Virus record (IMG/VR): IMGVR_UViG_3300013233_000235
Location: 140,042-204,041 of that record
Strand: one strand, 5' to 3'
DNA: 64,000 nucleotides
Shown here: one piece after another, positions 19,712-58,719 of the stretch
Layout: each line of letters starts with the position of its first letter
Position numbering within the stretch: the stretch's first letter is position 1
Translations under genes and position numbers: made by a program
The notes under the pieces: generated by a model
Seen by the model: only the letters and a program-made list of their open reading frames with translations
Databases searched by the model: none
Told to the model about the DNA's origin: nothing

Positions 19712-19818
19712 AAGTTAGCCCTTCGGGGCTTTCTTTTTTATTTGTTTCCCTATATTCTTAGAACTATATAACTTGTATGAAGAGACACTTTGATCTCTTG
19801 TATAGGAGTTTAGTTATG
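19712..19818 (+). promoter_or_regulatory. Family-A cassette repeat copy 5
   Basis: Conserved architecture; loop CACTTTGA, 3' block GTATAGGAG. Confidence 0.9.
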
Positions 19819-20403
19819 AGCGATTTTCTGACACACAGGTGTCACATGTTAAGTACACGCACCACCACCGGGGGGTCCGAGATGACCACCATCGACGGCC
19901 TTGATCTACCACGGGCGGTTAACGTAGGCGGGCATATTGAGTTGAAGAGAGGGGGTGTTACATATCGCACTGATAAGCATCCGCCTTGGAAGCCCTTTAC
20001 AGTGTTGTCAAGCTCGGGACGCCACGCCAACGGGGTATTGTTGGAAATGCACTGCGGGTGCGATGGCACATACCCGTATGTCCTGTTTATCGATGGTCGG
20101 TGCCACGTACTAGGTAAACATTTTGGTGACATCCCAGAGAATGGTTGCGTGTTTGAACAGGGTCTCTGGATGTACGGCCATGGTCTTCTAGACTACCATG
20201 AGTCTGTGGTTATAGCCATCGGTGAGTACACCGGCACCAAACCTAAGCGGCAGCTCAACTACAAGGTAATTGCAATGGATACCCCCAAACAAGAGTTCGT
20301 AATAGAGATTATACCCAATGCTGAAAATAGCATTGTGTATCAATTGCGGGTAACCCTGCCAGCGTGGGGTCCCCGCGCACAAGTGATACAACGCGTTAAG
20401 TAA
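19816..20403 (+). CDS. Hypothetical protein, 'DG..P' family
   Basis: TIDGLDLP..GGVTYRTDKHPPW..CVFEQGLWMYGHG. Confidence 0.75.
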   Translation: MSDFLTHRCHMLSTRTTTGGSEMTTIDGLDLPRAVNVGGHIELKRGGVTYRTDKHPPWKPFTVLSSSGRHANGVLLEMHCGCDGTYPYVLFIDGRCHVLGKHFGDIPENGCVFEQGLWMYGHGLLDYHESVVIAIGEYTGTKPKRQLNYKVIAMDTPKQEFVIEIIPNAENSIVYQLRVTLPAWGPRAQVIQRVK

Positions 20404-20434
20404 TACACACACGGTATATACCAGGAGCTTAATT

Positions 20435-20866
20435 ATGAAAAACGAACAAGCATTAAAAGACAAATTGCTGTATGTTAAAGCGGAGTCCGTAAAAACGATC
20501 TCCTCCACGTTCGCCAATGGGGATCGTATCAGTCATCTGGAGGTGGACGGCATGCATATCCAGGGGCTGGATGGGTCGTCCGACGGGCGGATCGGGTGGA
20601 GTGACGGCGTCAACACATGGGTGAGCCAGCCATACCCGCTTTACCATAAAGCGGTCGGTGGACCCCAACGCTGCGGTGGGGGGCACAACCACATTGGGGT
20701 TATACTCCGCGTAAGGGATGGTGGTAGACGTCATCGGCTGTGCCTAGTTTACCGTGGCGCTGTGTACTACACTGGCGGGCTGGTTAAGAAAACCGGTGAT
20801 GACATCCTATTCAAGAACCTACTTTGGGTTGGTGGTGTGGGTCCACGGCCAGTGCCCCAGTCGTGA
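20435..20866 (+). CDS. Hypothetical protein, 'DG..P' family
   Basis: LEVDGMHIQG..IGWSDGVNTWVSQPYPLY; SD AGGAG. Confidence 0.75.
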   Translation: MKNEQALKDKLLYVKAESVKTISSTFANGDRISHLEVDGMHIQGLDGSSDGRIGWSDGVNTWVSQPYPLYHKAVGGPQRCGGGHNHIGVILRVRDGGRRHRLCLVYRGAVYYTGGLVKKTGDDILFKNLLWVGGVGPRPVPQS

Positions 20867-21444
20867 GCCAGTCGGAGTGGATGACACCCTACCAATCATT
20901 CCTGATAAGTGTCTCCCCCCAACCCCCCGATGGTGACATTATCTGCATTGATGGGCATCCCCTGCCCAATATAGGGCGTGTCGGCAACGGGTTAACCCTG
21001 GACATATCCGGTGAGCCATGGGTGACGGGTCCCCACCCGCCGTACGTGATGCTCAATGGGGTGCCAGGTGGCATCGCCATCGTATTGGTGTTCCGATGTG
21101 ATGATCTTGGCACGATGGTCATCGTTGATAAAGGCGGCCCGGTTATAATGGGGAGGTTAGTCAGGGAGGTCCCCGCGTGTGGTCCAAATGGCACAATTGT
21201 TTGTGAGCAGCGTGTGTGGTTACACGGCTTGGGGCACACCGACCTACACGGGCAGCTAAAGAAAGCCGTTAAATACACCCGGACGTGGGATGCGATCTGC
21301 ATTAGCACAGCCAACGTCAAGTCTGAGTGGGTTATCACAGCCACCAGGGGTTGGCCCACCAATCCCGACGTAGTGGATAACCCATGGGAGCCAACGTATC
21401 TGTGCCGTTGGGAAGATGCCCACTGGGCATTTGCACGTATGTAA
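20863..21444 (+). CDS. Hypothetical protein, 'DG..P' family
   Basis: CIDGHPLP..GEPWVTGPHPPY..IVCEQRVWLHGLG; start uncertain. Confidence 0.7.
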   Translation: MSQSEWMTPYQSFLISVSPQPPDGDIICIDGHPLPNIGRVGNGLTLDISGEPWVTGPHPPYVMLNGVPGGIAIVLVFRCDDLGTMVIVDKGGPVIMGRLVREVPACGPNGTIVCEQRVWLHGLGHTDLHGQLKKAVKYTRTWDAICISTANVKSEWVITATRGWPTNPDVVDNPWEPTYLCRWEDAHWAFARM

Positions 21445-21446
21445 TT

Positions 21447-21552
21447 AGTTAGCCCTTCGGGGCTTTCTTTTTTATTTGCTTCCCTATATTCTTAAGCCTA
21501 TATAACTTGTATGAAGAGACGCATTGATCTCTTGTATAGGAGTTTAGTTATG
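21447..21552 (+). promoter_or_regulatory. Family-A cassette repeat copy 6
   Basis: Conserved architecture; loop CGCATTGA, 3' block GTATAGGAG. Confidence 0.9.
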
Positions 21553-23481
21553 AGTGAAAGATATATCAGAGATCTGAGCCTTAAGTTACAGAGGTGGACA
21601 GATGCGTATGCAAGTGGCACCCCACTTGTGTCAGATAGTTTATACGATGCCGTCCATAAGGAGTTGGACAAAGCGGTCGGCGGATCGGCTGAGAAGTTCG
21701 TACCGCAGACCCTGACAGTGGCCACCACTGGTAAGCACCGCGTCCCCATGACCACTCTCAAAGATGTTTACACGATTGAGGATATTGGCAGATTCGTGAA
21801 TGGTTTTCCAGAGGGTACCCGCTTTATAGCGGAGCCAAAGATGGATGGGATGGCTATCAGCCTAACATATGAAAACGGCGATCTGGTCAAAGGGTTAACC
21901 CGGGGTGATTATGTTAATGGGGAGCTCTGTACTGAATCCATCAGCTACGTCCCAAGCGTGCCTATAACACTCGGTCTGGATATCGATATGGAGGTTCGGG
22001 GTGAGCTTGTTGTTACCCACGAAAGCTTTACACCAGACATGGGTGTATCGCCACGCAACTTTGCCGCAGGCAGCCTTATGAAGGGGGACCAAGAGCGGAA
22101 CAAGCATCTAACGTTCATCCCATACGCTGTGACAGTGGCGCGCGGTGAATACGGGGAGTTAACAAGTCTGCACGACAAACTCATGTGGCTGGGGACCATC
22201 GGGTTCCAAACCAATCCGGCCAAGATACTGCTGGGCACCCGCGTACAAATCATCGATTGGATGAAGGATATGCATGAAAGTTGTGACCCGCAGGCACGGC
22301 CAGAAGCTTACATGTGCGCGATTGATGGGTTAGTGCTAAAGGTCGATGACTCTGAGCTGTTTGCCGACGCTGGTGGTACCAGCAAGCACCCCCACGGGGC
22401 GATCGCCTTTAAGTACAACTCAGCTAGCGCTGTCACCACGATCGTGGCTGTGGAGGAGTCTATGGGCCGCTTTGGCGAGATAACTCCAGTGGCTATCGTG
22501 GAGCCTGTGACCATCGATGGTAATGTGGTTACCCGTGCCACCCTCCACAACTACGCCAAGGTTCTAAGCAAGGGTGTATTCATTGGTGGGGAATGCGTAC
22601 TGATGCGGGCAGGTGGTGTGATACCGGACCTGGTTGCTATGACGGAGAATGTTGACAAGTTGCCAATCGTATCCCCGCCATCTGTATGCCCAAGCTGTGG
22701 TGCCGCAACAATCGTCACCGCCGACCTTATCAACACCACCTGTAGTAGAGAAGACTGGTCGGAATGTAAGGCGCGTGCGGTGCGTACTGGGGCATACATC
22801 GTGTCTAAGAAGGTGCTAAATATACAGGGGCTTGGTGGAAAGACTATCGAGAAGTTGTATGACCTTGGTGTCAAGTTAACCACCTTGCACCATGTGCTGA
22901 CACTTTCCAAGGATGATCTGGTAAAGGCCGCAGGTAACGCTATGGGGAAAAAGGTATATGACCGCATCCAGTCGGCGGCTGAGATGTCATGCCAAACATT
23001 CATAAAGGCCATGTGCATAAAGGAAATCGGCAACCATGCATCCGTTATATTGTCCGAGCATGTGGGTCACCACCCCCAGGGTTTTCTCGACTTATCGGGG
23101 GAATCTATCGGGCTTATCAATGGTTTAGCCGAAGATGAAGTTGGGCATTTGGTGGAATTCTTTGGCGATACCGCGAGGCAAGCGGCGGCATGGCGTGGTC
23201 ATGATCTGGTGACAGACCCTATGTCGCCTGAAGATGACCCCGCTAATAAAAACGCTGATGAGTTGGTAGCTAGGTTCAGCAACGCTGGATTCGATACGTC
23301 TCACAAGGTGTGTGTAACCGGATCGTTTGAGGGTTGTAACCGCGATGATATTCACAAGGCCCTAAGCAACGCTGGGTTCACACCCACGAAATCAGCCAGT
23401 GCGAATACCGCCCTAATAGCCGGCGATAAACCGTCGGCATCAAAGGTGGATAAATCGGGCGCGATGTTCTGTGCGTTTTAA
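21550..23481 (+). CDS. ligA: NAD-dependent DNA ligase
   Basis: Ia motif AYASGTPLVSDSLYD; EPKMDG; TRGD; EVRGE; PRNFAAGSL; IDGLVLK; AIAFKY; RATLHN; RAGGVIP; C4 Zn finger; HhH; BRCT-like end. Confidence 0.95.
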   Translation: MSERYIRDLSLKLQRWTDAYASGTPLVSDSLYDAVHKELDKAVGGSAEKFVPQTLTVATTGKHRVPMTTLKDVYTIEDIGRFVNGFPEGTRFIAEPKMDGMAISLTYENGDLVKGLTRGDYVNGELCTESISYVPSVPITLGLDIDMEVRGELVVTHESFTPDMGVSPRNFAAGSLMKGDQERNKHLTFIPYAVTVARGEYGELTSLHDKLMWLGTIGFQTNPAKILLGTRVQIIDWMKDMHESCDPQARPEAYMCAIDGLVLKVDDSELFADAGGTSKHPHGAIAFKYNSASAVTTIVAVEESMGRFGEITPVAIVEPVTIDGNVVTRATLHNYAKVLSKGVFIGGECVLMRAGGVIPDLVAMTENVDKLPIVSPPSVCPSCGAATIVTADLINTTCSREDWSECKARAVRTGAYIVSKKVLNIQGLGGKTIEKLYDLGVKLTTLHHVLTLSKDDLVKAAGNAMGKKVYDRIQSAAEMSCQTFIKAMCIKEIGNHASVILSEHVGHHPQGFLDLSGESIGLINGLAEDEVGHLVEFFGDTARQAAAWRGHDLVTDPMSPEDDPANKNADELVARFSNAGFDTSHKVCVTGSFEGCNRDDIHKALSNAGFTPTKSASANTALIAGDKPSASKVDKSGAMFCAF

Positions 23482-23492
23482 ATAGCAGTATA

Positions 23493-23603
23493 AAGTCAGC
23501 CCCGATTAAGGGGCTTTCTTTTTTATTTGTTTCGCCCATATGTCAGAACTATATAACTACTATGAAGAGACACTTTGATCTCTTACTTTGGAGTTTAGTT
23601 ATG
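23493..23603 (+). promoter_or_regulatory. Family-A cassette repeat copy 7
   Basis: Terminator loop GATTAA; loop CACTTTGA, 3' block ACTTTGGAG. Confidence 0.9.
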
Positions 23604-24284
23604 AGTAAAGTAAACGTAGATGTAACCCCCGCGATGGTAGAAACCTCATTAGCGGTATGCCTGTCCCGGAATGGTGGTACCAGTGTGCGGGAGTTTGTCG
23701 AAAAGACCAGCGCCTACTGGAAAGCCATCTTGACTGAAGAGGCTGGGGAGGTGCTGTGCGAATTGGGCATAAAGCCCTGGAAACCTCTTAAGAAGGTGAA
23801 CGCACTGCTGGAATGCGCAGACTTGTATTACACGTTACTGGCTGCCGCACACCAGCCCGGCTCGGGGGTAGGTAACGTGTACGAATCCGTGGCAGATTGG
23901 ATGTCGGCACCACCGCGCGATGACATCCCCGAGGGGTTGGTTGACAAAGGCCTCACGCTGGTACACGTGGCGTCAGATCCGATGAGTACGGTCGCCGACA
24001 AGTTGGGGGAGACCGCCATGATAATGGTGGCGATCCTCAAACAGTTGGGGTACTCCCCCGCCGACATGCTTGGGGCGTTCAAATGGAAGAACGCATTGGT
24101 AGAACGACGGTACGAGTTTACACCGACAACTGATGGGAAGGTCGTTATCTACAACAGCGGGGTGATGTCCGATGATACCGCGCTGGGCCACATCATCCGT
24201 GAGCGGGATCTCGCGATGGATCTCCATAAACCATACATGGAGATGTGCGGGGAGATCCGCAACCGTCTGGCACCTGTAAAATAG
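23601..24284 (+). CDS. MazG-like all-alpha NTP pyrophosphohydrolase
   Basis: ILTEEAGEV ... LLECADLYY (EExxE..ExxD) and KWKNALVERRY. Confidence 0.65.
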   Translation: MSKVNVDVTPAMVETSLAVCLSRNGGTSVREFVEKTSAYWKAILTEEAGEVLCELGIKPWKPLKKVNALLECADLYYTLLAAAHQPGSGVGNVYESVADWMSAPPRDDIPEGLVDKGLTLVHVASDPMSTVADKLGETAMIMVAILKQLGYSPADMLGAFKWKNALVERRYEFTPTTDGKVVIYNSGVMSDDTALGHIIRERDLAMDLHKPYMEMCGEIRNRLAPVK

Positions 24285-24293
24285 CAGCATAAG

Positions 24294-24324
24294 TAGACCC
24301 CCTATTAAGGGGTCTATTCTTTTT
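24294..24324 (+). terminator. Intrinsic terminator
   Basis: TAGACCCC/GGGGTCTA stem followed by TTCTTTTT. Confidence 0.8.
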
Positions 24325-24329
24325 ATGTA

Positions 24330-24435
24330 AATCTGGAATCAACGTATTTTCAATGACATATAACTAAAATGGATATAGGCGTTTTGACTTATATCTATTA
24401 ATGGCTTAACAGCCAGGAGTTTTACTATGACAAAT
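24330..24435 (+). promoter_or_regulatory. Family-B cassette repeat copy 1
   Basis: AATCTGGAATCAA..TCAATGACATATAAC-TAAA-ATG-GATATAGG-CGTTTTGA-CTTATATC..TGGCT-TAAC-AGCCA-GGAG..ATGACAAAT; near-identical to 58211-58314. Confidence 0.9.
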
Positions 24436-24768
24436 CTAAAAGCGTTAGTAGTGTTCACAAATCAGTCATCCACCTATCCAGGTGTAAGCCGGTTGGTACA
24501 CAAGGCGTTAGATGGGTACAATGTTGGAGTTATGAGTATCGGTACCGTGGACCTGGAAAACAATGCGGAGGATAGAGCAATGATGGTACAACTGTTGCAG
24601 AGAAAGCAGCACGAATACAATCGGGTTGTTTACATCGATGGGGGGGATGGGAAGGCTTCTCATACCGTAGCATCCCACGCAGGTGCGTGGGATATGGTAA
24701 TCCACGTGAATGCAGACAAAGTGGTAACAGGTTGCAGTAGATCATGGGGTGAGGATATCACCCTATAA
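24427..24768 (+). CDS. Hypothetical protein
   Basis: SD AGGAG; bounded by a B and an A repeat. Confidence 0.75.
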   Translation: MTNLKALVVFTNQSSTYPGVSRLVHKALDGYNVGVMSIGTVDLENNAEDRAMMVQLLQRKQHEYNRVVYIDGGDGKASHTVASHAGAWDMVIHVNADKVVTGCSRSWGEDITL

Positions 24769-24838
24769 AGTCAGCCCCTTCGGGGGCTTTCTTTTTTATT
24801 TGTTTCCATACATTTTCAGAACTATATAACTTGTATGA
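24768..24838 (+). promoter_or_regulatory. Family-A repeat copy 8, partial (terminator + promoter; hairpin/SD replaced)
   Basis: Matches other copies up to TATATAACTTGTATGA, then diverges abruptly. Confidence 0.88.
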
Positions 24839-24894
24839 TAGAATAACCACATCACCTATTGACCACTATACTCTGGGTAACAAAAGGATGCTGT

Positions 24895-25212
24895 ATGAAC
24901 ACTATACAAGTAGAAGGAAAGATGTACCCAGTGATCGATATGTCAACCCACCCCACAAATGGGCTCATGCTCGTGGCTTTCGCCAAAGGTGTGGCGGTGG
25001 TTAGACAGGACGCACTAGGTACCAATTATGTGGATGTGGTTATACCTTACCAGGTCCCTAACCCTAGGGACATCAGGGTCCATGTAAATGCGGCTTTATC
25101 AAATGGCTATTTTTCGGCCGACTTAACCTATACGCACGTGGGCACCCCATGTACGTTCAACCTAATAATCCCAGCAATGGGGGGAACAGATGATGAAACA
25201 CACATTCGGTAG
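24895..25212 (+). CDS. Hypothetical protein
   Basis: SD AAGGA before ATG 24895. Confidence 0.65.
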   Translation: MNTIQVEGKMYPVIDMSTHPTNGLMLVAFAKGVAVVRQDALGTNYVDVVIPYQVPNPRDIRVHVNAALSNGYFSADLTYTHVGTPCTFNLIIPAMGGTDDETHIR

Positions 25213-26026: not shown

Positions 26027-26055
26027 AAAATGGCCCGTTTGGGCCCTTTTTTTTT
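26025..26055 (+). terminator. Intrinsic (possibly bidirectional) terminator
   Basis: A6-T-GGCCC-GTTT-GGGCC-C-T9. Confidence 0.85.
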
Positions 26056-26093
26056 AGTCCGGTATTAAACCTTAATGCATAGGGAAGATGTAA

Positions 26094-26432: not shown

Positions 26433-26434
26433 CT

Positions 26435-27535: not shown

Positions 27536-27539
27536 CAAC

Positions 27540-40950: not shown

Positions 40951-43557
40951 TTAGACTTTTCCAAGGTCAATGGTGTCATTCACAGTGAGCACATCTGCGA
41001 CCTTGATGGCCCCTATATTAACCAATGCGTCGATGGCCGCTTGTACCGATACTGGTACCGCCGTATCAAGCTGGCCAGCAATTAGCAAAGGCGCCTGGTT
41101 AGCCACCTCGCTGTTTACTAATGCTGGTACTTGGCTGGTCACCTCGGCTGGTAACTTAGCAGAAACCTCAGTGGGTAGTCCTGCCGCAACAGCGGTGGTT
41201 ACAGCACCGGGCAGTTTGGAATCCACATCCGTGGTTACAGCGCCGGGGACAACGGCATTGACAGCGGTTGTTATCAGAGCCGGAGCTTGGTTAGCCACCT
41301 CGGCTGGTAGTTTAGCAGCAACCTCGGTGCCCACAGATGTGCCAATCTGGCCAGTCACCTCGGCTGGCAGTTTAGCAGCAACTTCTGTGGTTACAGCGCC
41401 TGGTACTGCCGTATTTACAGCGGTTGTTATCAGGGCTGGTGCCTGTTTAGTCACTTCGGCTGGTAACTTAAGACCAACTTCCGTTGCCACCAGTGGTGTG
41501 GCTTGGTTAGCCACCTCGGCTGGTAACACATTACCCACTTCTGTTGCAACGGAGGTGCCAATCTGCGTACCAACTTCCGCCGGTAGTTTAGCAGCAACTT
41601 CTGTGGTTAATGCTGCTGGTAACTGGGTACCAACTTCCGCCGGTAGTTTAGCAGCAACTTCTGTGGTTACGGCGCCTGGTACCGCCGTATTTACAGCGGT
41701 TGTTATCAGAGCCGGAGCTTGGTTAGCCACCTCGGCTGGTAGTTTAGCAGCAACTTCCGTTGCTACCAAGGGTGTGGCTTGGTTAGCCACCTCGGCTGGT
41801 AACACATTACCCACCTCTGTTGCAACGGAGGTGCCAATCTGGCCAGTCACCTCGGCTGGCAGTTTAGCAGCAACTTCTGTGGTTAATGCTGCTGGTAACT
41901 GGGTACCAACTTCCGCCGGTAACTTAGCAGCAACTTCTGCGGTTACAGCGGTGGGTAGCTGCTTAGTAACCTCAGTACCAACGACTGTGCTAAGTTGTAG
42001 CGCCACGGTGTCGGTGATAATGGGGGTCGCCAGCGTGGCGATCTCAGTGGCTAGGTTAGCCGATAACTGTTTGGTTACCTCGGCCGACACACTGGTTGGC
42101 AACGCCGCTGCTAGGGCTGTGGTAATCTCTGTAGGTAATTTGGTACCTAGCTGGTTGGCGATATCCACGGTGATCTGGTCCGTCAACTGTGTTGTTACCT
42201 CCGCCGTAACAGCGGCCGGTAACAGCTTGCCAATCTCCACAGTGATGCTATTACCGATTTGTGCACCCACCTCAATCGCAACCAGATTAGGGAGGTTTGC
42301 CACCATATACACTGCCACCTCATTAGCGAGGTTTGTACCTAAGGTGTTGGTTATGATGGTGGTGAGATTACCCAGGTCGGTGGCCTGCTGTGCCGTGATG
42401 TTCTGGATGTGCGCCGGTAAGGCTAGTTGTACACCCAGTGTGTCAATAGCCGCCCCTACTGCATTCGCAACCACGGTTGGCAAGGTGTCTGCCACAAACG
42501 CCGTCAATGCGGTACTAACACCGGCATTAACACTATCCGGTATAGTGACGCTCTTTATAGAGTTCATGGATGTGGTGACAGCTGCCGCCACGTTATCCGC
42601 TATAACCGTGGACTGATTAACCAGGTCTGTAACAAGTTGCTGACTTATATCGCTAAAGTAAGCTGGCGGGGAGTATGGTGCTGGTAGCTTCCCAACCTCT
42701 GTGTTAACTGTGGCCTGGATCTGGCCTGGAATATCTTCAATCGTGAGTTTTCTTCCGACCTCCGCTGTGACAGCATCTGCCAATGTTGCACTACCCAGTT
42801 GCTTGGTAACCTCCGCTGATACCCCAGCCGGAAGTGTGTTGGCTAGCAAGGGGTCCCACAACGTTGTTAATGCCGCCGACACCTTACCGGGAATGTCTTG
42901 GGCAGTTAGTGCACCAACCAGCTGCGTGGCTATCTTACCGGGGATGTCTTGGGCTGTAAGGCTAGTTAGTACCTGTGCGGCCACAGCCTCACCAAGCCTG
43001 TTATTGAGGCCCAGTGTGATACCATCCGTGACTGCTTGTGCGATGGTGCCCGGCAGGTTCAGTGTGGTTATCTGGGACGTAACCTCTGTACCGATCTGTA
43101 AAGGCACGTTCATGGCGGTGAAGGCGGTGGTTATCTGGTTGCTGACCTCTGTGGGTATGGTTGTACTCTTTAACAGAGTTACCGCGGTATCAAGCAACAG
43201 CTTGCTGGTAGTGTCAACCACTGTGCGTAACGCCTTAAGATCGGTGACGTCCGCAGCTGTCATCAACTGAATATGCGATGGCAGTATTGTGGTTAGATCG
43301 ATGTTACCAACTGCGGTGGCAGCGGCAGCATCCACGGTGCTGTTAATACCATTTACAGCGGCAACCACATCGGCCGATAGCAACCCCAGATCAATCCACG
43401 GGGAGTTTGCAATACCTGGGCTAAACCATAGTGAGCCATCCACGGTGATAAGGGCTGGCATTGATATAACAGTCGGTGTTGGCGGCACGGCCGCGTATAC
43501 CGGTAGTACGAAGTCTGACTTAAACTCCAACCGGCTTAGTACTTGAATGCTTGGCAT
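40951..43557 (-). CDS. Repetitive Ala/Val/Thr-rich fibrous virion protein
   Basis: EVAAKLPA (8 aa) and EVxxQxPxxxTT (12 aa) units; 276-nt higher-order duplication. Confidence 0.75.
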   Translation of the reverse strand: MPSIQVLSRLEFKSDFVLPVYAAVPPTPTVISMPALITVDGSLWFSPGIANSPWIDLGLLSADVVAAVNGINSTVDAAAATAVGNIDLTTILPSHIQLMTAADVTDLKALRTVVDTTSKLLLDTAVTLLKSTTIPTEVSNQITTAFTAMNVPLQIGTEVTSQITTLNLPGTIAQAVTDGITLGLNNRLGEAVAAQVLTSLTAQDIPGKIATQLVGALTAQDIPGKVSAALTTLWDPLLANTLPAGVSAEVTKQLGSATLADAVTAEVGRKLTIEDIPGQIQATVNTEVGKLPAPYSPPAYFSDISQQLVTDLVNQSTVIADNVAAAVTTSMNSIKSVTIPDSVNAGVSTALTAFVADTLPTVVANAVGAAIDTLGVQLALPAHIQNITAQQATDLGNLTTIITNTLGTNLANEVAVYMVANLPNLVAIEVGAQIGNSITVEIGKLLPAAVTAEVTTQLTDQITVDIANQLGTKLPTEITTALAAALPTSVSAEVTKQLSANLATEIATLATPIITDTVALQLSTVVGTEVTKQLPTAVTAEVAAKLPAEVGTQLPAALTTEVAAKLPAEVTGQIGTSVATEVGNVLPAEVANQATPLVATEVAAKLPAEVANQAPALITTAVNTAVPGAVTTEVAAKLPAEVGTQLPAALTTEVAAKLPAEVGTQIGTSVATEVGNVLPAEVANQATPLVATEVGLKLPAEVTKQAPALITTAVNTAVPGAVTTEVAAKLPAEVTGQIGTSVGTEVAAKLPAEVANQAPALITTAVNAVVPGAVTTDVDSKLPGAVTTAVAAGLPTEVSAKLPAEVTSQVPALVNSEVANQAPLLIAGQLDTAVPVSVQAAIDALVNIGAIKVADVLTVNDTIDLGKV

Positions 43558-49482: not shown

Positions 49483-49507
49483 AGAAATAACACAAAAAGG
49501 ATTGATT

Positions 49508-49954: not shown

Positions 49955-49962
49955 GAACTTTT

Positions 49963-50256
49963 ATGCGACTACCCTTGCTTATCACCGCATCCCTTCTAAG
50001 TGGGTGCATGAACATCACCTATAACCGCCCACCACCTGCGCCAACCCCTGTGCCTGAAAAGAAGTGTGTGGTACAGGAATCCGATTATATTAAACTGGTA
50101 GGTCTTTCAGCCGGCTCTTTACCAGAAGCCCTTGATGATCCTACTGATGCCGCCTATGAGGCTTACGCCACTGCTTTAATAACCGTACTGTTGACGTATC
50201 GTCAATCCGCATCCATCTTGATCAAAGGACTCACCGCCCGTGCCGAATGTAATTGA
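49963..50256 (+). CDS. Lipoprotein (o-spanin-like)
   Basis: Lipobox LLSG-C followed by a Pro-rich linker. Confidence 0.6.
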   Translation: MRLPLLITASLLSGCMNITYNRPPPAPTPVPEKKCVVQESDYIKLVGLSAGSLPEALDDPTDAAYEAYATALITVLLTYRQSASILIKGLTARAECN

Positions 50257-51640
50257 GTCTAACGATGATGGCGTGCCAGGTATACTTGTGGACTTTGATG
50301 TTCCGGCAACTGTGGCTAAGCATGTGGATATATTTACCGATGGCGGGGCAAAGCCTTCCCATGGTTCCGCAGGATGGGGTTTCTGGGCAGAGGACTCAGA
50401 TGGTACAACTTATAGTGCGCACGGGTACTTGGGTAGTATGTCTACCAACAACCGTGCTGAGCTACGTGCATTTAAGCGCGCACTACAGATGACGATACAC
50501 ATGGGATGGAAAAATATTACCATCTTGTCCGACTCAGAGTATGTAATCAAGGGTACTAAATGGGCCAGAGATAAATGGCGTAATAATAAGTGGCTTAAAC
50601 CCAATGGTGATGCGGTGCCTAACAAAGACTATTGGGTGTCCATACTCGATCTAGAGGATATACTCAAGGTTGAGGGCGTCAAGTGCGCTGTTAAGAAGGT
50701 AAAGGGCCACAGTGGTAAAGATGATGGTAATAATAAAGCCGACATGCTGGCCACACTGGGTAGGCTAGATGGCGAAGGTGGTGATTTCACTGAGTCAATG
50801 GTTGTGGCTAAGACCGGCGATGCACCGGTCAAAGTGAAGTCAGCTAAGTTCAATAAGATGTTGTCAGGCAAGAGGTTGTTCTTTATGGTCAACTCACCCG
50901 CACCAGTGGCCCCTGAAGGACGTACGGCGTATTACCAGACATCTTATCAGGATGAGGTAAAAGATGCCCCAGGCGAAGATCTAGGTGTGGACTTCGGTAG
51001 CACCACTTACTCTGTGCTACACTCTGTTGAGCCCATTGCGGAAGTGGAAGCAGTGTTGGAATATCAGCATGCGGTCACTCCAGATGATTTTGTTAGCCCA
51101 GTCATGATGTACCTAAGTAATGTGACCAAACCAAACGTGTGGCATGAGTTGGGTAACTACGGTAACAACCGTCTGAAGCACAAGCGTTTATCCGCTCGCA
51201 TGGTCGATGGCTTACCAATCACACGCTTTCTACGACCCCCGCGTAATGCGTATAGAGCACTAGACAAAATGGCTGACTTAGATCAGATCCTACATACGGT
51301 GTTATCAAGCGAGGATAACAACTACGAGATTACAGATATAACAGAAGAGCTGTACACAACGTCCGCCAAAGGTGTGCGTAAGATCAGTGATCTATTTAAG
51401 GAGCCTAGGCTACCTGTCAGCACCACATATGGCGGTAAGGACATAAAACTCAACCTAGTGGTCGGCATAGACCTACCTCCCAAGAACAACATGAGTGCCA
51501 TAGGTAAAGCCACCGGCGACCTAGAAGTACTACTTGTTAAATACGAGTCATACGACGATGGTTTTAGATACTGCGTTGTCATCAAATCCGAACAAGGCGA
51601 AGCAATATATTCCAGTCCCGCTAACTTAGAGGTGGCATAA
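50240..51640 (+). CDS. rnhA: Ribonuclease HI with phiKZ-type C-terminal extension
   Basis: IFTDGG, TNNRAEL, SDSEYV, VKGHSG, NNKADMLA. Confidence 0.92.
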   Translation: MPNVIESNDDGVPGILVDFDVPATVAKHVDIFTDGGAKPSHGSAGWGFWAEDSDGTTYSAHGYLGSMSTNNRAELRAFKRALQMTIHMGWKNITILSDSEYVIKGTKWARDKWRNNKWLKPNGDAVPNKDYWVSILDLEDILKVEGVKCAVKKVKGHSGKDDGNNKADMLATLGRLDGEGGDFTESMVVAKTGDAPVKVKSAKFNKMLSGKRLFFMVNSPAPVAPEGRTAYYQTSYQDEVKDAPGEDLGVDFGSTTYSVLHSVEPIAEVEAVLEYQHAVTPDDFVSPVMMYLSNVTKPNVWHELGNYGNNRLKHKRLSARMVDGLPITRFLRPPRNAYRALDKMADLDQILHTVLSSEDNNYEITDITEELYTTSAKGVRKISDLFKEPRLPVSTTYGGKDIKLNLVVGIDLPPKNNMSAIGKATGDLEVLLVKYESYDDGFRYCVVIKSEQGEAIYSSPANLEVA

Positions 51641-51647
51641 CGCCACC

Positions 51648-51676
51648 CCCACCCATGGTGCTAGGCCATGGGTGGG
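51648..51676. terminator. 11-bp inverted repeat between convergent genes
   Basis: CCCACCCATGG-N7-CCATGGGTGGG. Confidence 0.75.
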
Positions 51677-51687
51677 AGTTATGCATG

Positions 51688-53277: not shown

Positions 53278-53288
53278 TCTAAATCCCC

Positions 53289-54101
53289 TTAAATGATTTC
53301 TGTGAGTTTGTCCAGACTATCGCTGAATGCACTATTTAGAGCAGTGATGTTATGATGCACCACTGCCAGCATCTCGATCTCTTTTGCGAGTGTTAACATG
53401 GTGGTGGCCAACATGGTGGTGGTGGCCTTGTTTTCGCTCACTATGCGGTCATCCCCTTTAGCGGCGGCAACATATGCCACTACTGCTTTACCAAGGGTGG
53501 CATCGTACTCGGCTAGCTTCTTCACGTTCACCTCGGCCATCACCACATTGATCTCATCAATGACTTTACCGGCTTCGATTAACTCGAACTGGCTATCATA
53601 GATCTCTTCCGCTTTAACGGCCGATTTAGGGCTATTAGCCTTGCGTTTAAAGTAAGGGGCCATATCTTTCCGGATGTCTCTCACATTCGCGTAAGACATA
53701 CCCTTAGGGTCCCATACCCGAAGCTGTTCGGTGGTGGTGGTAACCGCGTGTTTGAAGTATGTGGTAAGGGGCTGGATCAGGCGCTCGTTGACATCACTGA
53801 GTTCTGTTATAGCGCTGAGTAACACCCGGGAATAGTCCAGGATGAAACCGCTGAACGTAACCGGTTTATAGAGAATCGTGCCATTAAACGCCGCAGGGCT
53901 AAACGCCTTAAGGTCACTTTCCATACTACGGCCGATGGACACCACGTCTTGTACATCGTGGGCCATAGAGTCTAGGCCATATCGGGTGCGATTGGCTAGT
54001 ACGCGTATATTCTTTTTTAGGAATCCCTGGATATCTTCTGTCACCCCTTGCATACCTGGGTCACTATCTTCGTTTAAAACGTTTCTGATGGAAATGGTCA
54101 T
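53289..54101 (-). CDS. phiKZ-like virion/head protein divergent from uvsX
   Basis: YKPVTFSGFILDY motif; SD GGAG before ATG 54101; synteny. Confidence 0.65.
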   Translation of the reverse strand: MTISIRNVLNEDSDPGMQGVTEDIQGFLKKNIRVLANRTRYGLDSMAHDVQDVVSIGRSMESDLKAFSPAAFNGTILYKPVTFSGFILDYSRVLLSAITELSDVNERLIQPLTTYFKHAVTTTTEQLRVWDPKGMSYANVRDIRKDMAPYFKRKANSPKSAVKAEEIYDSQFELIEAGKVIDEINVVMAEVNVKKLAEYDATLGKAVVAYVAAAKGDDRIVSENKATTTMLATTMLTLAKEIEMLAVVHHNITALNSAFSDSLDKLTEII

Positions 54102-54193
54102 TATTAGGTCTCCGTCTAATTCCATAAATATCCAGCATTTACCGGATCTAATGTGAGTAATACACTTAACATACAATCAGCAAGGGCGCTAAC

Positions 54194-55609
54194 ATGTTTG
54201 ACAATATACCATCCGCATTACCGTTAATACCATACCCCAACGTGGGCTGTCTTATGGATATACCCACCGCCTACTCCGTACTTGGTTCTAAGGGTGAGTC
54301 TATATTGGTAGGTGGGCAAGTGCCCATCTTCTCCGTCGCAGGCCCTGGGAACGTAGGTAAGTCCGAGTTAACTAATTACCGTGTTTGTACGGTAATTGGT
54401 AGATACAAGAATAGCTTCGGCATGGTCTATGATACGGAGGTGTCTGCGCAATACAGTCGTTATGTGCGCGCACTGAGTAGATTCCCCGAGTTTGACGGTA
54501 TGGATCTAACTATAGACAATCCCCGGTTTAAGTTAGTTGTATCCGGTGACATGTTAGGGGATGCGTGGTTCGAGGGTATACGCACGGTTCTTACCAAATC
54601 CCGTATGTCCGCTAATCGTAAGACCGAGGCGACACCATTTCTGCGTACAGATGGGTCTATCCTAAAGTGGCCCGCACCATGGGTTTTCGATATTGACTCC
54701 CTGTCTATGTTCAAGGGGGCCGCCCAGACAAAGCAGTTAGACGATAACACTATCGGATCATCTGAACAGAACACCGTATTCATGGGCGATGGCAAGACCA
54801 AGACCTTACTCATGACGATCTTGCCAAACCTTGCCCATAAGAGTTCGACCTCCTGGCTGGCGGTTGCACACGTGGGCACCACCATCAAGATGGAGAAATA
54901 CGCACCCGATGCGCCCAAGCTGACGTTTGCAAAATCGGGTATTAAGAAGAAAGGTGTTCCGCCCATCTTCGACAGCATCAACGGTATGTTGATCGAGATA
55001 GCTGGCACCACGGTGTGTACTAACTCCAGCAGTGATAAGTCGGCCAGGTTCCCTCTACGCGAAGAAGATCGTAGTAAGAAGGGTACGGCTATCGATCTAA
55101 ACGTAATGCGTGGTGTGACCACCCGTAACAAGTACGGCAACAGCGGCCAGACTTGGAACTTCGTAACATCCCAGCGTGATGGTCTTAATGTTGAGCTTAC
55201 AGAGTTCCTGTACGTCAAGGATGCTGAGGGGTATGATGTTGGATTTGGCCTTAGCGGATCTAATACTAACTACGTGCTCGATCTAGCACCGGATACCAAG
55301 TTACAGCGCACCAACGTGCGCATCAAATTACAGACTACACCGATGTTGCGTAGGGCATTAACCATTACGGCCGACCTGTTGCAGATCAAGCTATTGTGGG
55401 GTCCTGAGAAAATCGATCCGGACCTATTATGTGACCCAGCGACACTCTACGCCGATCTTAAGGCTATGGGGTATAACTGGGATGAGTTACTTGACACCCG
55501 TGAGTACTGGCTATATGACCAGTACTCAAAGAAGGAAAAGCCATTCCTCTCTACCATAGATCTTCTGCGGATGCGCAAAGGGTTGTACAAACCATATTGG
55601 ATGAAATAA
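54194..55609 (+). CDS. uvsX: UvsX/RecA-like recombinase
   Basis: NVGCLMDIPT, Walker A AGPGNVGKS, YDTE, Walker B DIDSLS, RNKYG; C-terminal YKPYW. Confidence 0.88.
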   Translation: MFDNIPSALPLIPYPNVGCLMDIPTAYSVLGSKGESILVGGQVPIFSVAGPGNVGKSELTNYRVCTVIGRYKNSFGMVYDTEVSAQYSRYVRALSRFPEFDGMDLTIDNPRFKLVVSGDMLGDAWFEGIRTVLTKSRMSANRKTEATPFLRTDGSILKWPAPWVFDIDSLSMFKGAAQTKQLDDNTIGSSEQNTVFMGDGKTKTLLMTILPNLAHKSSTSWLAVAHVGTTIKMEKYAPDAPKLTFAKSGIKKKGVPPIFDSINGMLIEIAGTTVCTNSSSDKSARFPLREEDRSKKGTAIDLNVMRGVTTRNKYGNSGQTWNFVTSQRDGLNVELTEFLYVKDAEGYDVGFGLSGSNTNYVLDLAPDTKLQRTNVRIKLQTTPMLRRALTITADLLQIKLLWGPEKIDPDLLCDPATLYADLKAMGYNWDELLDTREYWLYDQYSKKEKPFLSTIDLLRMRKGLYKPYWMK

Positions 55610-55610
55610 C

Positions 55611-55958
55611 ATGTGTGATATCAATGATAGAATCTACGATGCTCTGGATGAGCATGTGGAGGGCTTAGCGGCCGAGTTATACATTACGGACATTCGCTCT
55701 AACTTGGGTGACCCCGCCATGGTCGGTGAATGGTACTTGGAGAAAGATTTGATCAAGTACAATGCTATTTACTGGGGGTTACAGGTTAGCCGCATCTGTG
55801 GGAACGATGAACGGTTCAGTGCCGACTCCCTCGCCTATACCGATTCGGTCGATGGATTCATGGCGGTATTTAACACCCGTGTACTGCCTTACCTAGTTAG
55901 TGATAGCATGAACTGTTGCGCGGTCATAGCCCCGCCCACGGTGAATGGCAATGTCTAG
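55611..55958 (+). CDS. Hypothetical protein
   Basis: Packed between uvsX and the RNAP subunit gene. Confidence 0.7.
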   Translation: MCDINDRIYDALDEHVEGLAAELYITDIRSNLGDPAMVGEWYLEKDLIKYNAIYWGLQVSRICGNDERFSADSLAYTDSVDGFMAVFNTRVLPYLVSDSMNCCAVIAPPTVNGNV

Positions 55959-56619
55959 GGCCAAGGTTGAGAAGTTCTGGCTTGAGGCCATCCGCGAGTT
56001 GGAGGATGGTGATGTGAACGTGGACATCCATAAAGAATTGCTTAAAGGGCTGTCCAATAAAGAATTTGAACAGCTGATGCAAAACTTTAGAGATAAGGTT
56101 GAGTACCCGTCAATGGTGGTACCCAATGGTGCGGAGTTCACACTCAATACTGCCCGCAGTCGTAAAGTTGGGGAACGGCTTGGAGTCAACTTTTTTCAGC
56201 GCATCGTTTACACAGATCCCGCCACCGGTGAAACAATCGTGACACCTGAGAAGTACATCGTGTCTCACCAAACTGCCCGTCGCCAAAAGGAGCATTTGAT
56301 CAAGAAGCAATCCATACCAGAGGGGGACTCTGTTATCGATGCCGCCACTGGTCAGGTAACTGGGGCTGATAAAGGCTCACGGATGTCTCTCCCAGAACTA
56401 CAGGCACTCGAAGGTAAGCGTATGCACGCTGGCCTAGCTGAGACCACCCATATACGCGGCGGTGATGGGAAGGCATTACAAGCCATGCGTAAATCGATCC
56501 AACAAACTGGTAGGTTTAGCCTAGCCCCTATTCAGGCGGCAGGTACTAAGACTACATCCACACAAACCATGCGTGCAACATTGATAGCAATGTTACTGGA
56601 TACCGAAATTGGAAAGTAA
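55945..56619 (+). CDS. Virion RNA polymerase split beta subunit, C-terminal part (phiKZ gp149-like)
   Basis: RRQKEHLIKKQS..ATGQVTGADKGSRMSLPELQAL..IRGGD resembles the RpoB C-terminus. Confidence 0.8.
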   Translation: MAMSRAKVEKFWLEAIRELEDGDVNVDIHKELLKGLSNKEFEQLMQNFRDKVEYPSMVVPNGAEFTLNTARSRKVGERLGVNFFQRIVYTDPATGETIVTPEKYIVSHQTARRQKEHLIKKQSIPEGDSVIDAATGQVTGADKGSRMSLPELQALEGKRMHAGLAETTHIRGGDGKALQAMRKSIQQTGRFSLAPIQAAGTKTTSTQTMRATLIAMLLDTEIGK

Positions 56620-57055
56620 AACCGTTGTTGTAGACATGCAGTACCTTAATCGGCTTTTGGCTGTCTGTATAAAGCGGTTATACCCCGTGGAGGGCTACGG
56701 GCAATGTACCCGCGAATTGCTGTTCCATTACCGATATATGCCGCACACCGACATCGCAGTTGACGGTGATGCACTCAATGTCTTGGAGAGGGAAGCTGCG
56801 GGCGTATTCCAACCGTATGCGACAAGGCTCCTAGCAGATTACTTAATCGAAATATCCTTCGTCGGACACACACTGGAGACCATATGCGATATACTGGGCA
56901 GTGGCAGTGGCCCATACTTTTCTGCGGATACCCGTGAGGACGGAATAGAGGCTGTGACAACCGCCTTTGCAGATAGACCCACACTACTTGTATCTAGGTT
57001 AGCGAGCATGCTTGGGGAGGCTGATATGGCCTATATGGGTATAACCAATGGGTAA
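56609..57055 (+). CDS. Hypothetical protein
   Basis: Overlapping operon gene. Confidence 0.6.
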   Translation: MESKTVVVDMQYLNRLLAVCIKRLYPVEGYGQCTRELLFHYRYMPHTDIAVDGDALNVLEREAAGVFQPYATRLLADYLIEISFVGHTLETICDILGSGSGPYFSADTREDGIEAVTTAFADRPTLLVSRLASMLGEADMAYMGITNG

Positions 57056-57764
57056 GCTGAAGAGGGTATTAGTAACATTAGACTCCCTACTGGATACGAG
57101 ACTGGGCACAGTGGCGTTACTTAACCCAGACTGGGCAGAAGCACTTCTTAATTCGGGTGGCTATCAGCGGCGGATAGGGAACAAGCTTAGCCGCATATGT
57201 CCGATGATTGATGATGATGCCGTGGATGAGGCTTGGGCTGCGCGCAGTGTGTCGTCCTTATTGCGCTCTGGGCCAACTCCGATCATGGCGGTCTTACGAG
57301 GCTCTGTGGCTGAATTCGCACTGCCTGGAGAACATGGGTCGCCGGGTCACCAGCTTGAGATCGTTGTGAACTACCACCCATACCTGCTTACGGAGGAGGA
57401 GCTGGTAATGCAACGGGATATAATAAAGACCGTTACAGGGTGTCATAAGGTGCGACATGTGTTCGTACCACTTGATGAGTTTTCGCCTGATACATTCGAC
57501 CCATATGAGTCTGTGGTGTACCATGAGCTGGATGACTGGATGACGATGTTCTACAGTCGGTTTGCCGGGCACACGCCACGGGATGTGACCTTCTATTATC
57601 CGGAGATTGTTCTGGCTAAAGAGGATGAGTATAAAAAGATGCCTGATGGTTTTGCCCCAACAATGCTGTTGCCATACATTGCTGAGTTAGGGGTTGTACC
57701 AGTGGCTAGACCTTTATACGAGTACAGCCTACTTACAGAAAGACCGTATAGCGATGATACGTGA
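57048..57764 (+). CDS. Conserved phiKZ-like hypothetical protein
   Basis: LDSLLDTRLGT..VNYHPYLLTEEE. Confidence 0.75.
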   Translation: MGKLKRVLVTLDSLLDTRLGTVALLNPDWAEALLNSGGYQRRIGNKLSRICPMIDDDAVDEAWAARSVSSLLRSGPTPIMAVLRGSVAEFALPGEHGSPGHQLEIVVNYHPYLLTEEELVMQRDIIKTVTGCHKVRHVFVPLDEFSPDTFDPYESVVYHELDDWMTMFYSRFAGHTPRDVTFYYPEIVLAKEDEYKKMPDGFAPTMLLPYIAELGVVPVARPLYEYSLLTERPYSDDT

Positions 57765-57767
57765 CAT

Positions 57768-57797
57768 AGACAGGCGGTAACCCGCCTGTCTTTTTTA
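57768..57797 (+). terminator. Intrinsic terminator
   Basis: AGACAGGCGG-TAAC-CCGCCTGTCT followed by a T tract. Confidence 0.85.
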
Positions 57798-58181
57798 TTT
57801 GTTTATAAGGTCGTCATAGTTAAGCTCAACATCCATCCCCTCCATCTCAGTGGCATCCACTATCTCATTGTTTATACGGTCCAGGCTGGCTACCACTTTA
57901 ACGGTGCGGCCTTCACCATTCTCAATGCGGCGCGGTGGTGGTACGAGCTTAGCTGCTTGTACCAGGGCTGCTGCTAGTGCCGCCACGCTATCATTTGATT
58001 CTTTGTCGATAAGCATGCGCTGCCTGTCTGTGGCCGTCTTAGCCATATCGGTTAATAACCGGCGGTGCTCCTTAGGGTCGTCAATGTTACGTAACAGAGC
58101 ATAACGACGTCTGGTCACATCTTCGATCTGGGCGTGGGGATTAGATATGAGTTCATCAGTGCTGTGCTTATTATCAGTCAT
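57795..58181 (-). CDS. Hypothetical protein
   Basis: SD AGGAG before ATG 58181. Confidence 0.7.
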   Translation of the reverse strand: MTDNKHSTDELISNPHAQIEDVTRRRYALLRNIDDPKEHRRLLTDMAKTATDRQRMLIDKESNDSVAALAAALVQAAKLVPPPRRIENGEGRTVKVVASLDRINNEIVDATEMEGMDVELNYDDLINK

Positions 58182-58210
58182 GTTTTTCTCCTGGGGGTCT
58201 ATACTATCGC

Positions 58211-58314
58211 AATCTGGAATCAAGCATATCTCAATGACATATAACTAAAATGGATATAGGCGTTTTGACTTATATCACTATGGCTTAACAGCCAGGAGTT
58301 TTACTATGACAAAT
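58211..58314 (+). promoter_or_regulatory. Family-B cassette repeat copy 2
   Basis: Near-identical to 24330-24435, including ATGACAAAT. Confidence 0.9.
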
Positions 58315-58611
58315 TCAAATGGTCTTATCGTTACCACATCCCCCACCGCGTTACCACAGGGTGTCGCCGAACAGATCGGGTGCGCAGACGCCCTAACCAT
58401 CAACTTATCCTACCGCAGCCGTGGTAGTGAGCGGATGGATGCGATACTTGATGCACTGATGAGCGGGTTGCATAGCAGCCGTACACTTCTAACCGAATGC
58501 CCCGAGGAGGCGGCCCTGGGCACATGCCACGGCTACCGCATTATGACCCCCCTGCCGGATGGGTCCTATAGCCTGGTATCCCCGGGAGGGTTAGTAGAAA
58601 TCCTCTCGTAA
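58306..58611 (+). CDS. Hypothetical protein
   Basis: SD AGGAG; bounded by a B and an A repeat. Confidence 0.75.
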   Translation: MTNSNGLIVTTSPTALPQGVAEQIGCADALTINLSYRSRGSERMDAILDALMSGLHSSRTLLTECPEEAALGTCHGYRIMTPLPDGSYSLVSPGGLVEILS

Positions 58612-58719
58612 AGTCAGCCCCTTCGGGGGCTTTCTTTTTTATTTGTTTCCCTATATTCTTAAGCCTATATAACTTGTATGAAGAGACGCATTGATCTCTT
58701 ACTTTGGAGTTTAGTTATG
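58611..58719 (+). promoter_or_regulatory. Family-A cassette repeat copy 9
   Basis: Loop CGCATTGA, 3' block ACTTTGGAG. Confidence 0.9.

What the first reader, a model, noticed from the sequence alone, without database searches (positions are those of the whole stretch)
19712..58719. Family-A repeat copies are recombinant mosaics (four-gamete pattern)
Seen: all four combinations of loop and 3' block occur: copy 5 (CACTTT, GTATAGG), copy 6 (CGCATT, GTATAGG), copy 7 (CACTTT, ACTTTGG), copy 9 (CGCATT, ACTTTGG). The TACT/TTGT pre-ATG variants also assort with different spacer blocks. Copies 6 and 9, 37 kb apart, share the CCCTATATTCTTAAGCC spacer and loop and both lead ligase-family genes. Inference: ongoing recombination or gene conversion among copies, plausibly by the phage UvsX.
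Basis: seen in the sequence. Interest (0 to 1): 0.65.

Follow-up and report, generated by a model that had tools for sequence, protein, structure and literature searches.

The report
Shuffled early-promoter cassettes in jumbo phage
The repeat is a roughly 110-base terminator, promoter, leader and ribosome-site cassette placed before about 21 early gene units of an unknown phiKZ-like jumbo phage, and its copies are patchworks of one another, which fits exchange by homologous recombination as already described for similar cassettes (PeSLs) in T4-like phages.

Summary
Copies 5, 6, 7 and 9 carry all four loop and 3' block combinations. Copies 6 and 9 share an exact 54-nt tract.

The pattern holds genome-wide. 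In 21 full copies, 284 of 528 informative site pairs are incompatible, and the incompatibility is concentrated between modules. PHI permutation gives p<5e-5. My PHI code is calibrated on simulations without recombination. Hudson-Kaplan Rmin is 8. The genealogies of the left and right halves are essentially uncorrelated.

The repeat is a composite regulatory cassette. Its parts, in order, are:
- a stop codon and an intrinsic terminator;
- a T-rich tract and an invariant AT-rich motif;
- a leader of about 37 nt carrying an inverted repeat;
- a Shine-Dalgarno site and A-rich first codons.

All copies lie on one strand, and the flanking genes are unrelated. The phage encodes split multisubunit RNA polymerases like phiKZ, and the cassette fails a sigma-70 scan. 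The promoter is therefore probably read by the virion polymerase.

The best explanation is non-allelic homologous exchange among cassettes, mostly short conversion patches. This is a PeSL analogue in a new phage lineage. The claim that copy 9 leads a ligase-family gene is not confirmed.

The parts
9724..9834 (+). Family-A cassette copy 1 (stop/terminator, T-run, spacer, ATATAACT core at 9782, leader, SD, ATG 9832)
12585..12695 (+). Family-A cassette copy 2 (core at 12643, ATG 12693)
13845..13957 (+). Family-A cassette copy 3 (core at 13903; alternative SD block GAAGGATGTTGAT; ATG 13955)
15701..15811 (+). Family-A cassette copy 4 (different terminator hairpin; loop CGCATT; core at 15759; ATG 15809)
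19708..19818 (+). Family-A cassette copy 5 (loop CACTTT with GTATA block; core at 19766; ATG 19816)
21442..21552 (+). Family-A cassette copy 6 (loop CGCATT with GTATA block; spacer shared with copy 9; leads the NAD-dependent DNA ligase, true start 21550)
23493..23603 (+). Family-A cassette copy 7 (loop CACTTT with ACTTT block; core at 23551; ATG 23601)
24766..24838 (+). Family-A copy 8, truncated: terminator and promoter core only; homology ends just after TATGA, and a different leader follows
58609..58719 (+). Family-A cassette copy 9. It is painted as copy 5-like (alignment columns 21-35), copy 6-like (37-65) and copy 7-like (76-93). It leads the orphan gene 58717-60207.
60724..60837 (+). 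Family-A cassette copy 10 (third SD block type GAAAGGGTTTAATT; ATG 60835)
62155..62265 (+). Family-A cassette copy 11. It shares an exact 82-nt tract with the copy at genome position 124542, then switches SD block.
63069..63179 (+). Family-A cassette copy 12 (asymmetric terminator stem; -35-like TTGCTT shared with copy 6)
24292..24429 (+). Family-B cassette: its own terminator, the same ATATAACT core, and a different, strongly folded leader
   Evidence: (D8, D12)
58211..58308 (+). Family-B cassette without an upstream terminator
54194..55609 (+). UvsX-like recombinase gene, the candidate enzyme (presence only)
   Evidence: phrog_97, E 4.8e-24

Best explanation
Family A is a complete early-gene expression cassette of a phiKZ-like jumbo phage that encodes its own RNA polymerases.

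Each copy ends the upstream unit, often supplying the stop codon at a fixed position, followed by a GC hairpin and a T-run that act as an intrinsic terminator. It then starts the next unit. A T-rich tract and the invariant motif CTATATAACT are followed 6 nt later by the G of TATG, which I take as the transcription start. The resulting leader is about 37 nt. It begins with the inverted repeat AAGAGA..TCTCTT and ends in GGAG, an 8-9-nt spacer, ATG and A-rich first codons.

The invariant stretches between the variable modules give enough homology for non-allelic pairing during the phage's recombination-dependent replication. Short heteroduplex or conversion patches of tens of bases move module alleles from one locus to another. 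The modules that move are the spacer, the dinucleotide, the loop, the 5-nt linker and the SD block.

This keeps the family homogeneous and makes every copy a mosaic. Occasional crossovers at the same sites would insert, delete or swap the unrelated genes between cassettes, as in PeSLs.

Shown here: the anatomy, strand bias, mosaic statistics, unrelated flanks and phage type. Inferred: promoter class, start site, patch mechanism, enzyme and timing.
For: Anatomy and copy number:
- There are 12 copies in the window. Genome-wide there are 21 with a full promoter and leader (19 of them also with the terminator and T-run), plus partial copies. All lie on the + strand.
- Terminators are called at the cassettes.
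- The upstream stop codon sits exactly 58 nt before the core in 8 of 20 copies.
- The first-codon strings are almost exclusive to cassette-led genes.

Mosaicism:
- PHI p<5e-5, robust to collapsing columns and to dropping the SD block.
- My PHI code gives 3.5% false positives at 0.05 on no-recombination simulations that have even more homoplasy.
- Rmin is 8, and 97 of 231 biallelic site pairs show four gametes.
- Identical tracts are longer than permuted, 1873 against 1321+-75.
- Painting needs 72 segments against 117+-7 permuted.
- The left-half tree fits the right-half data about as badly as shuffled labels do, and the reverse also holds.

Simple co-duplication is unlikely: the downstream and upstream genes are unrelated except for two distant paralogue pairs at 28% and 40% identity.

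Module boundaries are real. Partial copies stop at them, and A/B hybrids exist.

Phage type and promoter class:
- RNAP beta and beta' fragments are present, 32% identical to the PhiPA3 gp065 / phiKZ gp071-like protein.
- The cassettes are not called by the sigma-70 scan.
- Published early promoters of such phages are AT-rich motifs near -10 with T-rich upstream tracts and 31-40-nt leaders. AR9 has motif-(6N)-G (PMC7598289, PMC8244752, PMC5312081, PMC11512511).

The PeSL precedent includes chimeric copies (PMC2839356, PMC4122927).

Copies 6 and 9 are separated by the virion-gene block, so their shared internal tract cannot come from one viable crossover.
Against: - Only one consensus sequence from one metagenome sample exists. 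Neither timing nor direction of exchange can be seen.
- Read-level confirmation was not possible.
- Some homoplasy by point mutation exists: two loop sites 2 nt apart show four gametes.
- At whole-allele level the loop against 3' block conflict is a single cycle.
- The leader inverted repeat is not more stable than shuffled sequence as RNA (z about 0), so its role is open.
- TTGTTT-17-TATATA is a weak sigma-70-like arrangement, so use of the host polymerase is not excluded.
- The nearest relative found (UvsX 37% identical) has only a 12-nt repeated motif and no long cassettes. The long cassette is therefore not a family trait.
Confidence: 0.72

Rival explanations
1. The mosaics are scars of reciprocal crossovers, not conversion patches. 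In this PeSL-type modular shuffling, cassettes of co-infecting relatives, or of excised cassette-plus-gene circles, recombine at non-allelic sites. Each gene insertion or deletion leaves a chimeric cassette at the junction.
For: - Flanking genes are unrelated orphans.
- Partial cassettes and A/B hybrids sit at gene junctions.
- A built-in stop codon and shared first codons would keep reading frames intact after such swaps.
- Chimeric PeSLs and mini-circles were demonstrated experimentally in RB49/phi1 (PMC2839356).
Against: - Many copies need 3 or more segments.
- Copies 6 and 9 share an internal tract flanked by differences on both sides and lie across the virion-gene block. This needs at least two exchanges per copy.
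- No relative is available to show gene gain or loss at cassettes.
- This rival is not exclusive of the main explanation.
Confidence: 0.18
2. There is no recombination. The copies diverged by descent and recurrent point mutation under selection that allows only a few states per position.
For: - The loop and the 5-nt linker are hypervariable (6 and 10 alleles in 21 copies).
- Two loop sites 2 nt apart already show four gametes.
Against: - Recurrent mutation predicts incompatibility that is independent of distance. The observed incompatibility is strongly dependent on distance.
- Simulations without recombination do not reproduce the signal.
- Shared alleles are multi-base blocks, such as 17-nt spacers differing at 6 or more sites and 13-14-nt SD blocks, found in different partnerships.
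Confidence: 0.04
3. The mosaics are an assembly artefact: the metagenome assembler switched paths inside shared tracts and created chimeric cassettes.
For: This is a single short-read metagenome contig from one sample. The reads could not be inspected.
Against: - The longest exact tract shared by any two copies is 82 nt, and the median is 28 nt.
- The whole variable part spans about 75 nt, which is shorter than usual Illumina reads and shorter than the largest k-mers of current assemblers (my own knowledge, not tested here).
- The contig closes with a 239-bp terminal repeat.
- The contig keeps coherent gene blocks.
Confidence: 0.05

Closest known systems
PeSLs (promoter-early stem-loops) of T4-like phages (Arbiol et al. 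2010, PMC2839356; Comeau et al. 2014, PMC4122927)
   Same: - Both are short composite terminator-plus-early-promoter repeats, present in many copies.
- Both sit before orphan genes.
- In both, chimeric copies arise by homologous recombination.
- PeSLs are proposed to drive gene shuffling.
   Different: - The host phage here is phiKZ-like, with its own multisubunit RNA polymerases, not T4-like.
- The promoter fails the sigma-70 consensus scan.
- The conserved unit is longer, about 110 nt, and also includes the whole leader, the SD site and the first codons.
- Mini-circles were not tested.
Early (virion-RNAP) promoters and conserved terminator motifs of phiKZ, 201phi2-1 and AR9 (PMC7598289, PMC8244752, PMC11512511, PMC5312081)
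   Same: - An AT-rich motif of about 10 nt lies near -10, with a T-rich tract upstream.
- There is a G start 6 nt after the motif, as in AR9.
- Predicted leaders are 31-40 nt.
- The elements lie before hypothetical early genes on one strand.
   Different: - The motif sequence is specific to this phage.
- Conservation extends far beyond the promoter.
- None of the parts of these papers that I read mentions mosaic exchange among copies.
Halovirus HF2 intergenic repeats that carry promoters (PMC8707807, abstract only read)
   Same: They are dispersed intergenic repeats of tens of bases that contain AT-rich promoter motifs.
   Different: HF2 is an archaeal virus with different repeat classes. I did not check whether those repeats recombine.

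Membership tests
PeSL (T4-like promoter-early stem-loop) | Resides in a T4-type phage genome | tested here: not met
   The phage has phiKZ-like split RNAP beta and beta' genes and phiKZ-like virion proteins at 25-32% identity. A UvsX-like gene is present.
PeSL (T4-like promoter-early stem-loop) | Sigma-70 consensus early promoter (-35/-10) with an AT-rich upstream region | tested here: not met
   The sigma-70 scan calls none of the cassettes. The best reading, TTGTTT-17-TATATA, matches 3/6 and 4/6 and lacks the final T. Partial and family-B copies keep only the AT-rich core.
PeSL (T4-like promoter-early stem-loop) | Adjacent GC-rich stem-loop acting as a terminator | tested here: met
   A hairpin plus T-run is called at every full window copy. 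Its fold z-score is -2.6. Function was not assayed.
PeSL (T4-like promoter-early stem-loop) | Chimeric copies produced by recombination between copies | tested here: met
   PHI, Rmin, painting and tree incongruence all support this.
PeSL (T4-like promoter-early stem-loop) | Excised cassette-plus-gene mini-circles; gene gain or loss at cassettes between close relatives | not testable with these tools
   No reads and no close relatives.
phiKZ-type early promoter read by virion RNAP | The phage encodes multisubunit RNAP beta/beta'-like subunits | tested here: met
   PF00562 and PF00623 hits lie in separate ORFs. The best phage matches are phiKZ-like RNAP beta fragments.
phiKZ-type early promoter read by virion RNAP | Conserved AT-rich motif of about 10 nt centred near -10, T-rich upstream, before early operons | tested here: inconclusive
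   The motif CTATATAACT occurs 24 times, all on the + strand, with a T-run upstream. Its position relative to the start is inferred by analogy with AR9 (PMC5312081). No transcript data are available.
phiKZ-type early promoter read by virion RNAP | Transcription independent of host RNAP and of new protein synthesis | not testable with these tools
   This needs infection experiments or in vitro transcription.

The most novel reading that the evidence does not exclude
This orphan jumbo phage may have turned its virion-polymerase early promoter into a portable, self-homogenising complete expression cassette. The cassette runs from stop codon and terminator through promoter, 5' leader and ribosome site to the first codons. 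It would double as the recombination site through which early accessory genes are gained, lost and moved. That would be an integrase-free, homology-driven gene-cassette system in the phiKZ-like lineage, where no such system has been described.
Probability: 0.3. Interest if true: 0.65.

Novelty: new variant of a known kind. Interest (0 to 1): 0.45.

Why it matters
Regulatory repeats that double as recombination sites are one proposed answer to how large lytic phages keep a stable core while rapidly changing their accessory early genes. So far the evidence comes from T4-like phages. Finding the same logic in a phage with a different transcription system would suggest convergent evolution of the strategy.

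It would also give:
- a ready-made map of about 25 early transcription units;
- a candidate virion-RNAP promoter for an uncultured lineage;
- a compact, naturally modular expression cassette that could be tested in phage engineering.

Tried and rejected
- **Read-level check.** No reads were laid, and I did not try another route.
- **Close relatives.** None were found.
  - Megablast against phages gave nothing.
  - A cassette pattern search in IMG/VR gave one chance match, L009, with no other similarity.
  - A cassette pattern search in metagenome contigs gave nothing.
  - Protein-seeded scans with the virion protein and the ligase gave nothing.
  - Exact-protein look-ups returned only the source contig.
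  - The word-indexed protein search returned only self. An earlier try with the ligase timed out.
- **Distant relatives.** Loci L017-L019 (UvsX 37% identical) lack the motif. The 239-kb relative has only a 12-nt repeated motif.
- **Rfam.** No family matched in the window.
- **Tubulin/PhuZ.** There was no Pfam hit. I make no claim about a phage nucleus.
- **Upstream-ORF reading of the leader.** The leader ATG is in frame with the gene in GGAG-type copies but runs into stops in others. It also probably lies upstream of the start site. I rejected this reading as the general explanation.
- **RNA hairpin as a stable structure.** Its energy is no better than shuffled sequence. I kept it only as a conserved inverted repeat of open function: a 5'-end cap-like stem or a protein-binding site.
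- **Genome distance.** Cassette similarity does not correlate with separation along the genome (rho -0.06).
- **Copy 9 cargo as a ligase.** It was not confirmed.
Full report
**What is there.**
The window is the last 64 kb of a 204,041-bp viral contig with a 239-bp terminal repeat. It comes from a single metagenome sample. The repeat finder reports 12 copies of a 134-nt family in the window.

Reading them side by side confirms every sequence statement in the finding. Genome-wide, an nhmmer profile and pattern searches find 21 copies with a full promoter and leader. Nineteen of these also carry the terminator and T-run. There are several partial copies and five copies of a second family, B. All are on the + strand.

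**Anatomy.**
Each full copy reads, from 5' to 3':
- a short conserved stretch that often contains the stop codon of the upstream gene; in 8 of 20 copies this lies exactly 58 nt before the core;
- a GC-rich hairpin followed by a T-run, called as an intrinsic terminator at every full window copy (fold z = -2.6);
- ATTTGTTTC, then a 17-nt variable spacer;
- the invariant core CTATATAACT, a variable dinucleotide (TG, AC or AA), then TATGAAGAG;
- an inverted repeat AAGAGA..TCTCTT around a variable 'loop', then a hypervariable 5-nt linker;
- one of four Shine-Dalgarno blocks, then the ATG.

The first three or four codons also belong to the repeat. ATGAACGAAGA occurs four times in the genome, always at a cassette-led start. 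ATGAGTAAAG occurs six times, five of them at such starts.

Partial copies end at module borders:
- two copies lack the terminator and T-run;
- copy 8 (24766-24838) stops right after TATGA;
- two loci keep only the core;
- one gene junction uses only the SD block directly after a stop codon.

Family B shares the ATATAACT core but has a different, strongly folded leader. Hybrids with an A-type terminator or T-run joined to a B promoter exist.

**Which phage, which polymerase.**
No nucleotide relative exists in the phage collection. Protein matches are to phiKZ-like jumbo phages at 25-32% identity. The genome carries separate ORFs with RNAP beta and beta' domains. The beta fragment is most similar to the PhiPA3 gp065 / phiKZ gp071-like protein.

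Reviews and transcript maps of such phages describe early promoters as follows:
- a phage-specific AT-rich motif of about 10 nt near -10 (PMC7598289);
- a T-rich tract upstream, and leaders of 31-40 nt in phiKZ (PMC8244752);
- conservation at -10, -20 and -30, with conserved terminator motifs, in 201phi2-1 (PMC11512511);
- the form motif-(6N)-G(+1) in AR9 (PMC5312081).

The cassette fits this description. The core is followed after 6 nt by the G of TATG, which gives a 37-40-nt leader.

The sigma-70 scan does not call any cassette, and partial and B copies conserve only the core. I therefore favour a virion-RNAP early promoter, at about two to one over a weak sigma-70 promoter. This part is inference; no transcript data exist.

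**Is the mosaic real and non-random?**
I aligned the 21 full copies (97 columns) and masked the non-homologous upstream parts of three copies.
- Of 33 informative sites, 284 of 528 pairs are incompatible. The compatibility matrix is block-structured: sites within a module agree, and sites in different modules conflict.
- The PHI statistic is far below its permutation distribution (p<5e-5 for windows of 3-10 sites).
- The signal survives collapsing identical neighbouring columns and removing the indel-bearing SD block (p about 1e-4).
- It is present in the 11 full window copies alone (p 0.004-0.008).
- As a control, 200 data sets simulated on the ML tree without recombination, with more homoplasy than observed, gave p<=0.05 in 3.5% of cases and never below 0.004.
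- Hudson-Kaplan Rmin is 8, and 97 of 231 biallelic pairs show four gametes.
- Runs of identity between copies are longer than after permuting columns (1873 against 1321+-75).
- Every copy can be rebuilt from 2-9 exact segments of other copies, 72 in all against 117+-7 after permutation. Copy 9 is painted as copy 5-like, then copy 6-like, then copy 7-like.
- The best tree needs 103 steps where 48 is the minimum. The tree of the left half explains the right half hardly better than shuffled labels do (78 against 89+-4.5). The right-half tree explains the left half no better than shuffled labels (88 against 91+-5).

**Limits of the four-gamete argument.**
Two loop positions 2 nt apart also show all four combinations, through two singleton alleles. 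Single-base homoplasy therefore occurs. When whole module alleles are treated as states, the loop against 3' block conflict is one cycle, and the spacer against dinucleotide conflict is three. The case rests on the distance dependence and on multi-base alleles shared in different partnerships. It does not rest on any single site pair.

**Not co-duplication.**
The genes downstream of the cassettes are unrelated, apart from two distant paralogue pairs at 28% and 40% identity. The upstream genes are also unrelated. Cassette similarity does not follow distance along the genome. Positions that clearly tolerate change, such as the spacer, loop and linker, are nevertheless identical between loci tens of kilobases apart. 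This points to transfer between loci rather than to ancient shared descent.

**Mechanism.**
The invariant stretches between modules are the likely pairing and exchange points. Copies 6 and 9 share an internal 54-nt tract flanked by differences on both sides. They are separated by the minus-strand virion-gene block. A single crossover cannot explain this, so short non-reciprocal patches (gene conversion) are the simplest account.

Crossovers at the same sites would explain the partial cassettes, the A/B hybrids and the orphan cargo. This is what was shown experimentally for PeSLs in RB49/phi1, including chimeric PeSLs (PMC2839356, PMC4122927).

A UvsX-like recombinase gene lies at 54194-55609. 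Its involvement is plausible but untested.

**Artefact.**
The longest exact tract shared by two copies is 82 nt, and the median is 28 nt. The variable part spans about 75 nt. Ordinary short reads should therefore span each mosaic, and path switching in assembly is unlikely.

**Relatives.**
None closer than 37% UvsX identity were found in any collection. Those distant relatives lack the motif and lack long cassettes. 'Ongoing' exchange thus remains untested. The long cassette looks like a trait of this lineage only.

**Copy 9 cargo.**
Copy 6 leads a clear NAD-dependent DNA ligase. The copy 9 protein has no family, PDB or homologue match beyond itself. Only weak traces point to LigA:
- a colinear N-terminal motif and a zinc-finger-like CxxC;
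- language-model neighbours scoring below 0.9.

The 'both ligase-family' remark is a lead, not a finding.

**Verdict.**
Recombination among copies is supported, while timing and enzyme remain open. The element is a PeSL-like regulatory cassette in a phiKZ-like phage, which makes it a new variant of a known kind and of moderate interest.

Noticed in passing
window 24292-24429 and 58211-58308; genome positions 47688, 97273, 127788: A second cassette family (B) shares the ATATAACT core but has a different, strongly folded leader (z = -2.5). Its five copies also show all four combinations of spacer variant and SD-tail variant. Two copies are A/B hybrids in the terminator and T-run part.
   Followed up: partly
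window 21511-21552, 58678-58719 and other GGAG-type copies: The ATG inside TATGAAGAG is in frame with the real start codon. ORF callers therefore over-extend these genes by 13 codons. The source record calls the ligase as 656 aa from 21511, whereas the SD-led start is at 21550.
   Followed up: yes
window 58717-60207: The gene led by copy 9 encodes a 496-aa orphan protein. It has no homologue other than itself among 1.8 billion representatives, and it shows only weak, colinear LigA-like traces without an evident KxDG motif.
   Followed up: partly
window 4113-4238, inside ORF 1806-4247: A perfect tandem duplication of a 42-nt unit, plus a degenerate third copy, lies inside an 813-aa ORF with no Pfam match.
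   Followed up: no
window 41100-41970, inside minus-strand ORF 40951-43557: Nested 60-nt and 276-nt periodic repeats (89% matches over 2.1 copies of 276 nt) lie in an 868-aa protein of the virion-gene block. This is probably a repetitive fibre-like protein.
   Followed up: no
genome position 45828 (outside the window): The SD block GGAGTTTAGTTATG is used alone, directly after a stop codon, at an internal gene junction. It has no promoter or terminator parts.
   Followed up: no
window 13989-14690 and the leader inverted repeat of all A copies: A helix-turn-helix protein gene follows copy 3. The conserved 6-8-6 inverted repeat in the leader is not a stable RNA hairpin, so it could instead be an operator for a dimeric DNA-binding protein.
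   Followed up: no
window 50240-51640: An RNase H domain protein of 466 aa lies next to the virion-gene block.
   Followed up: no
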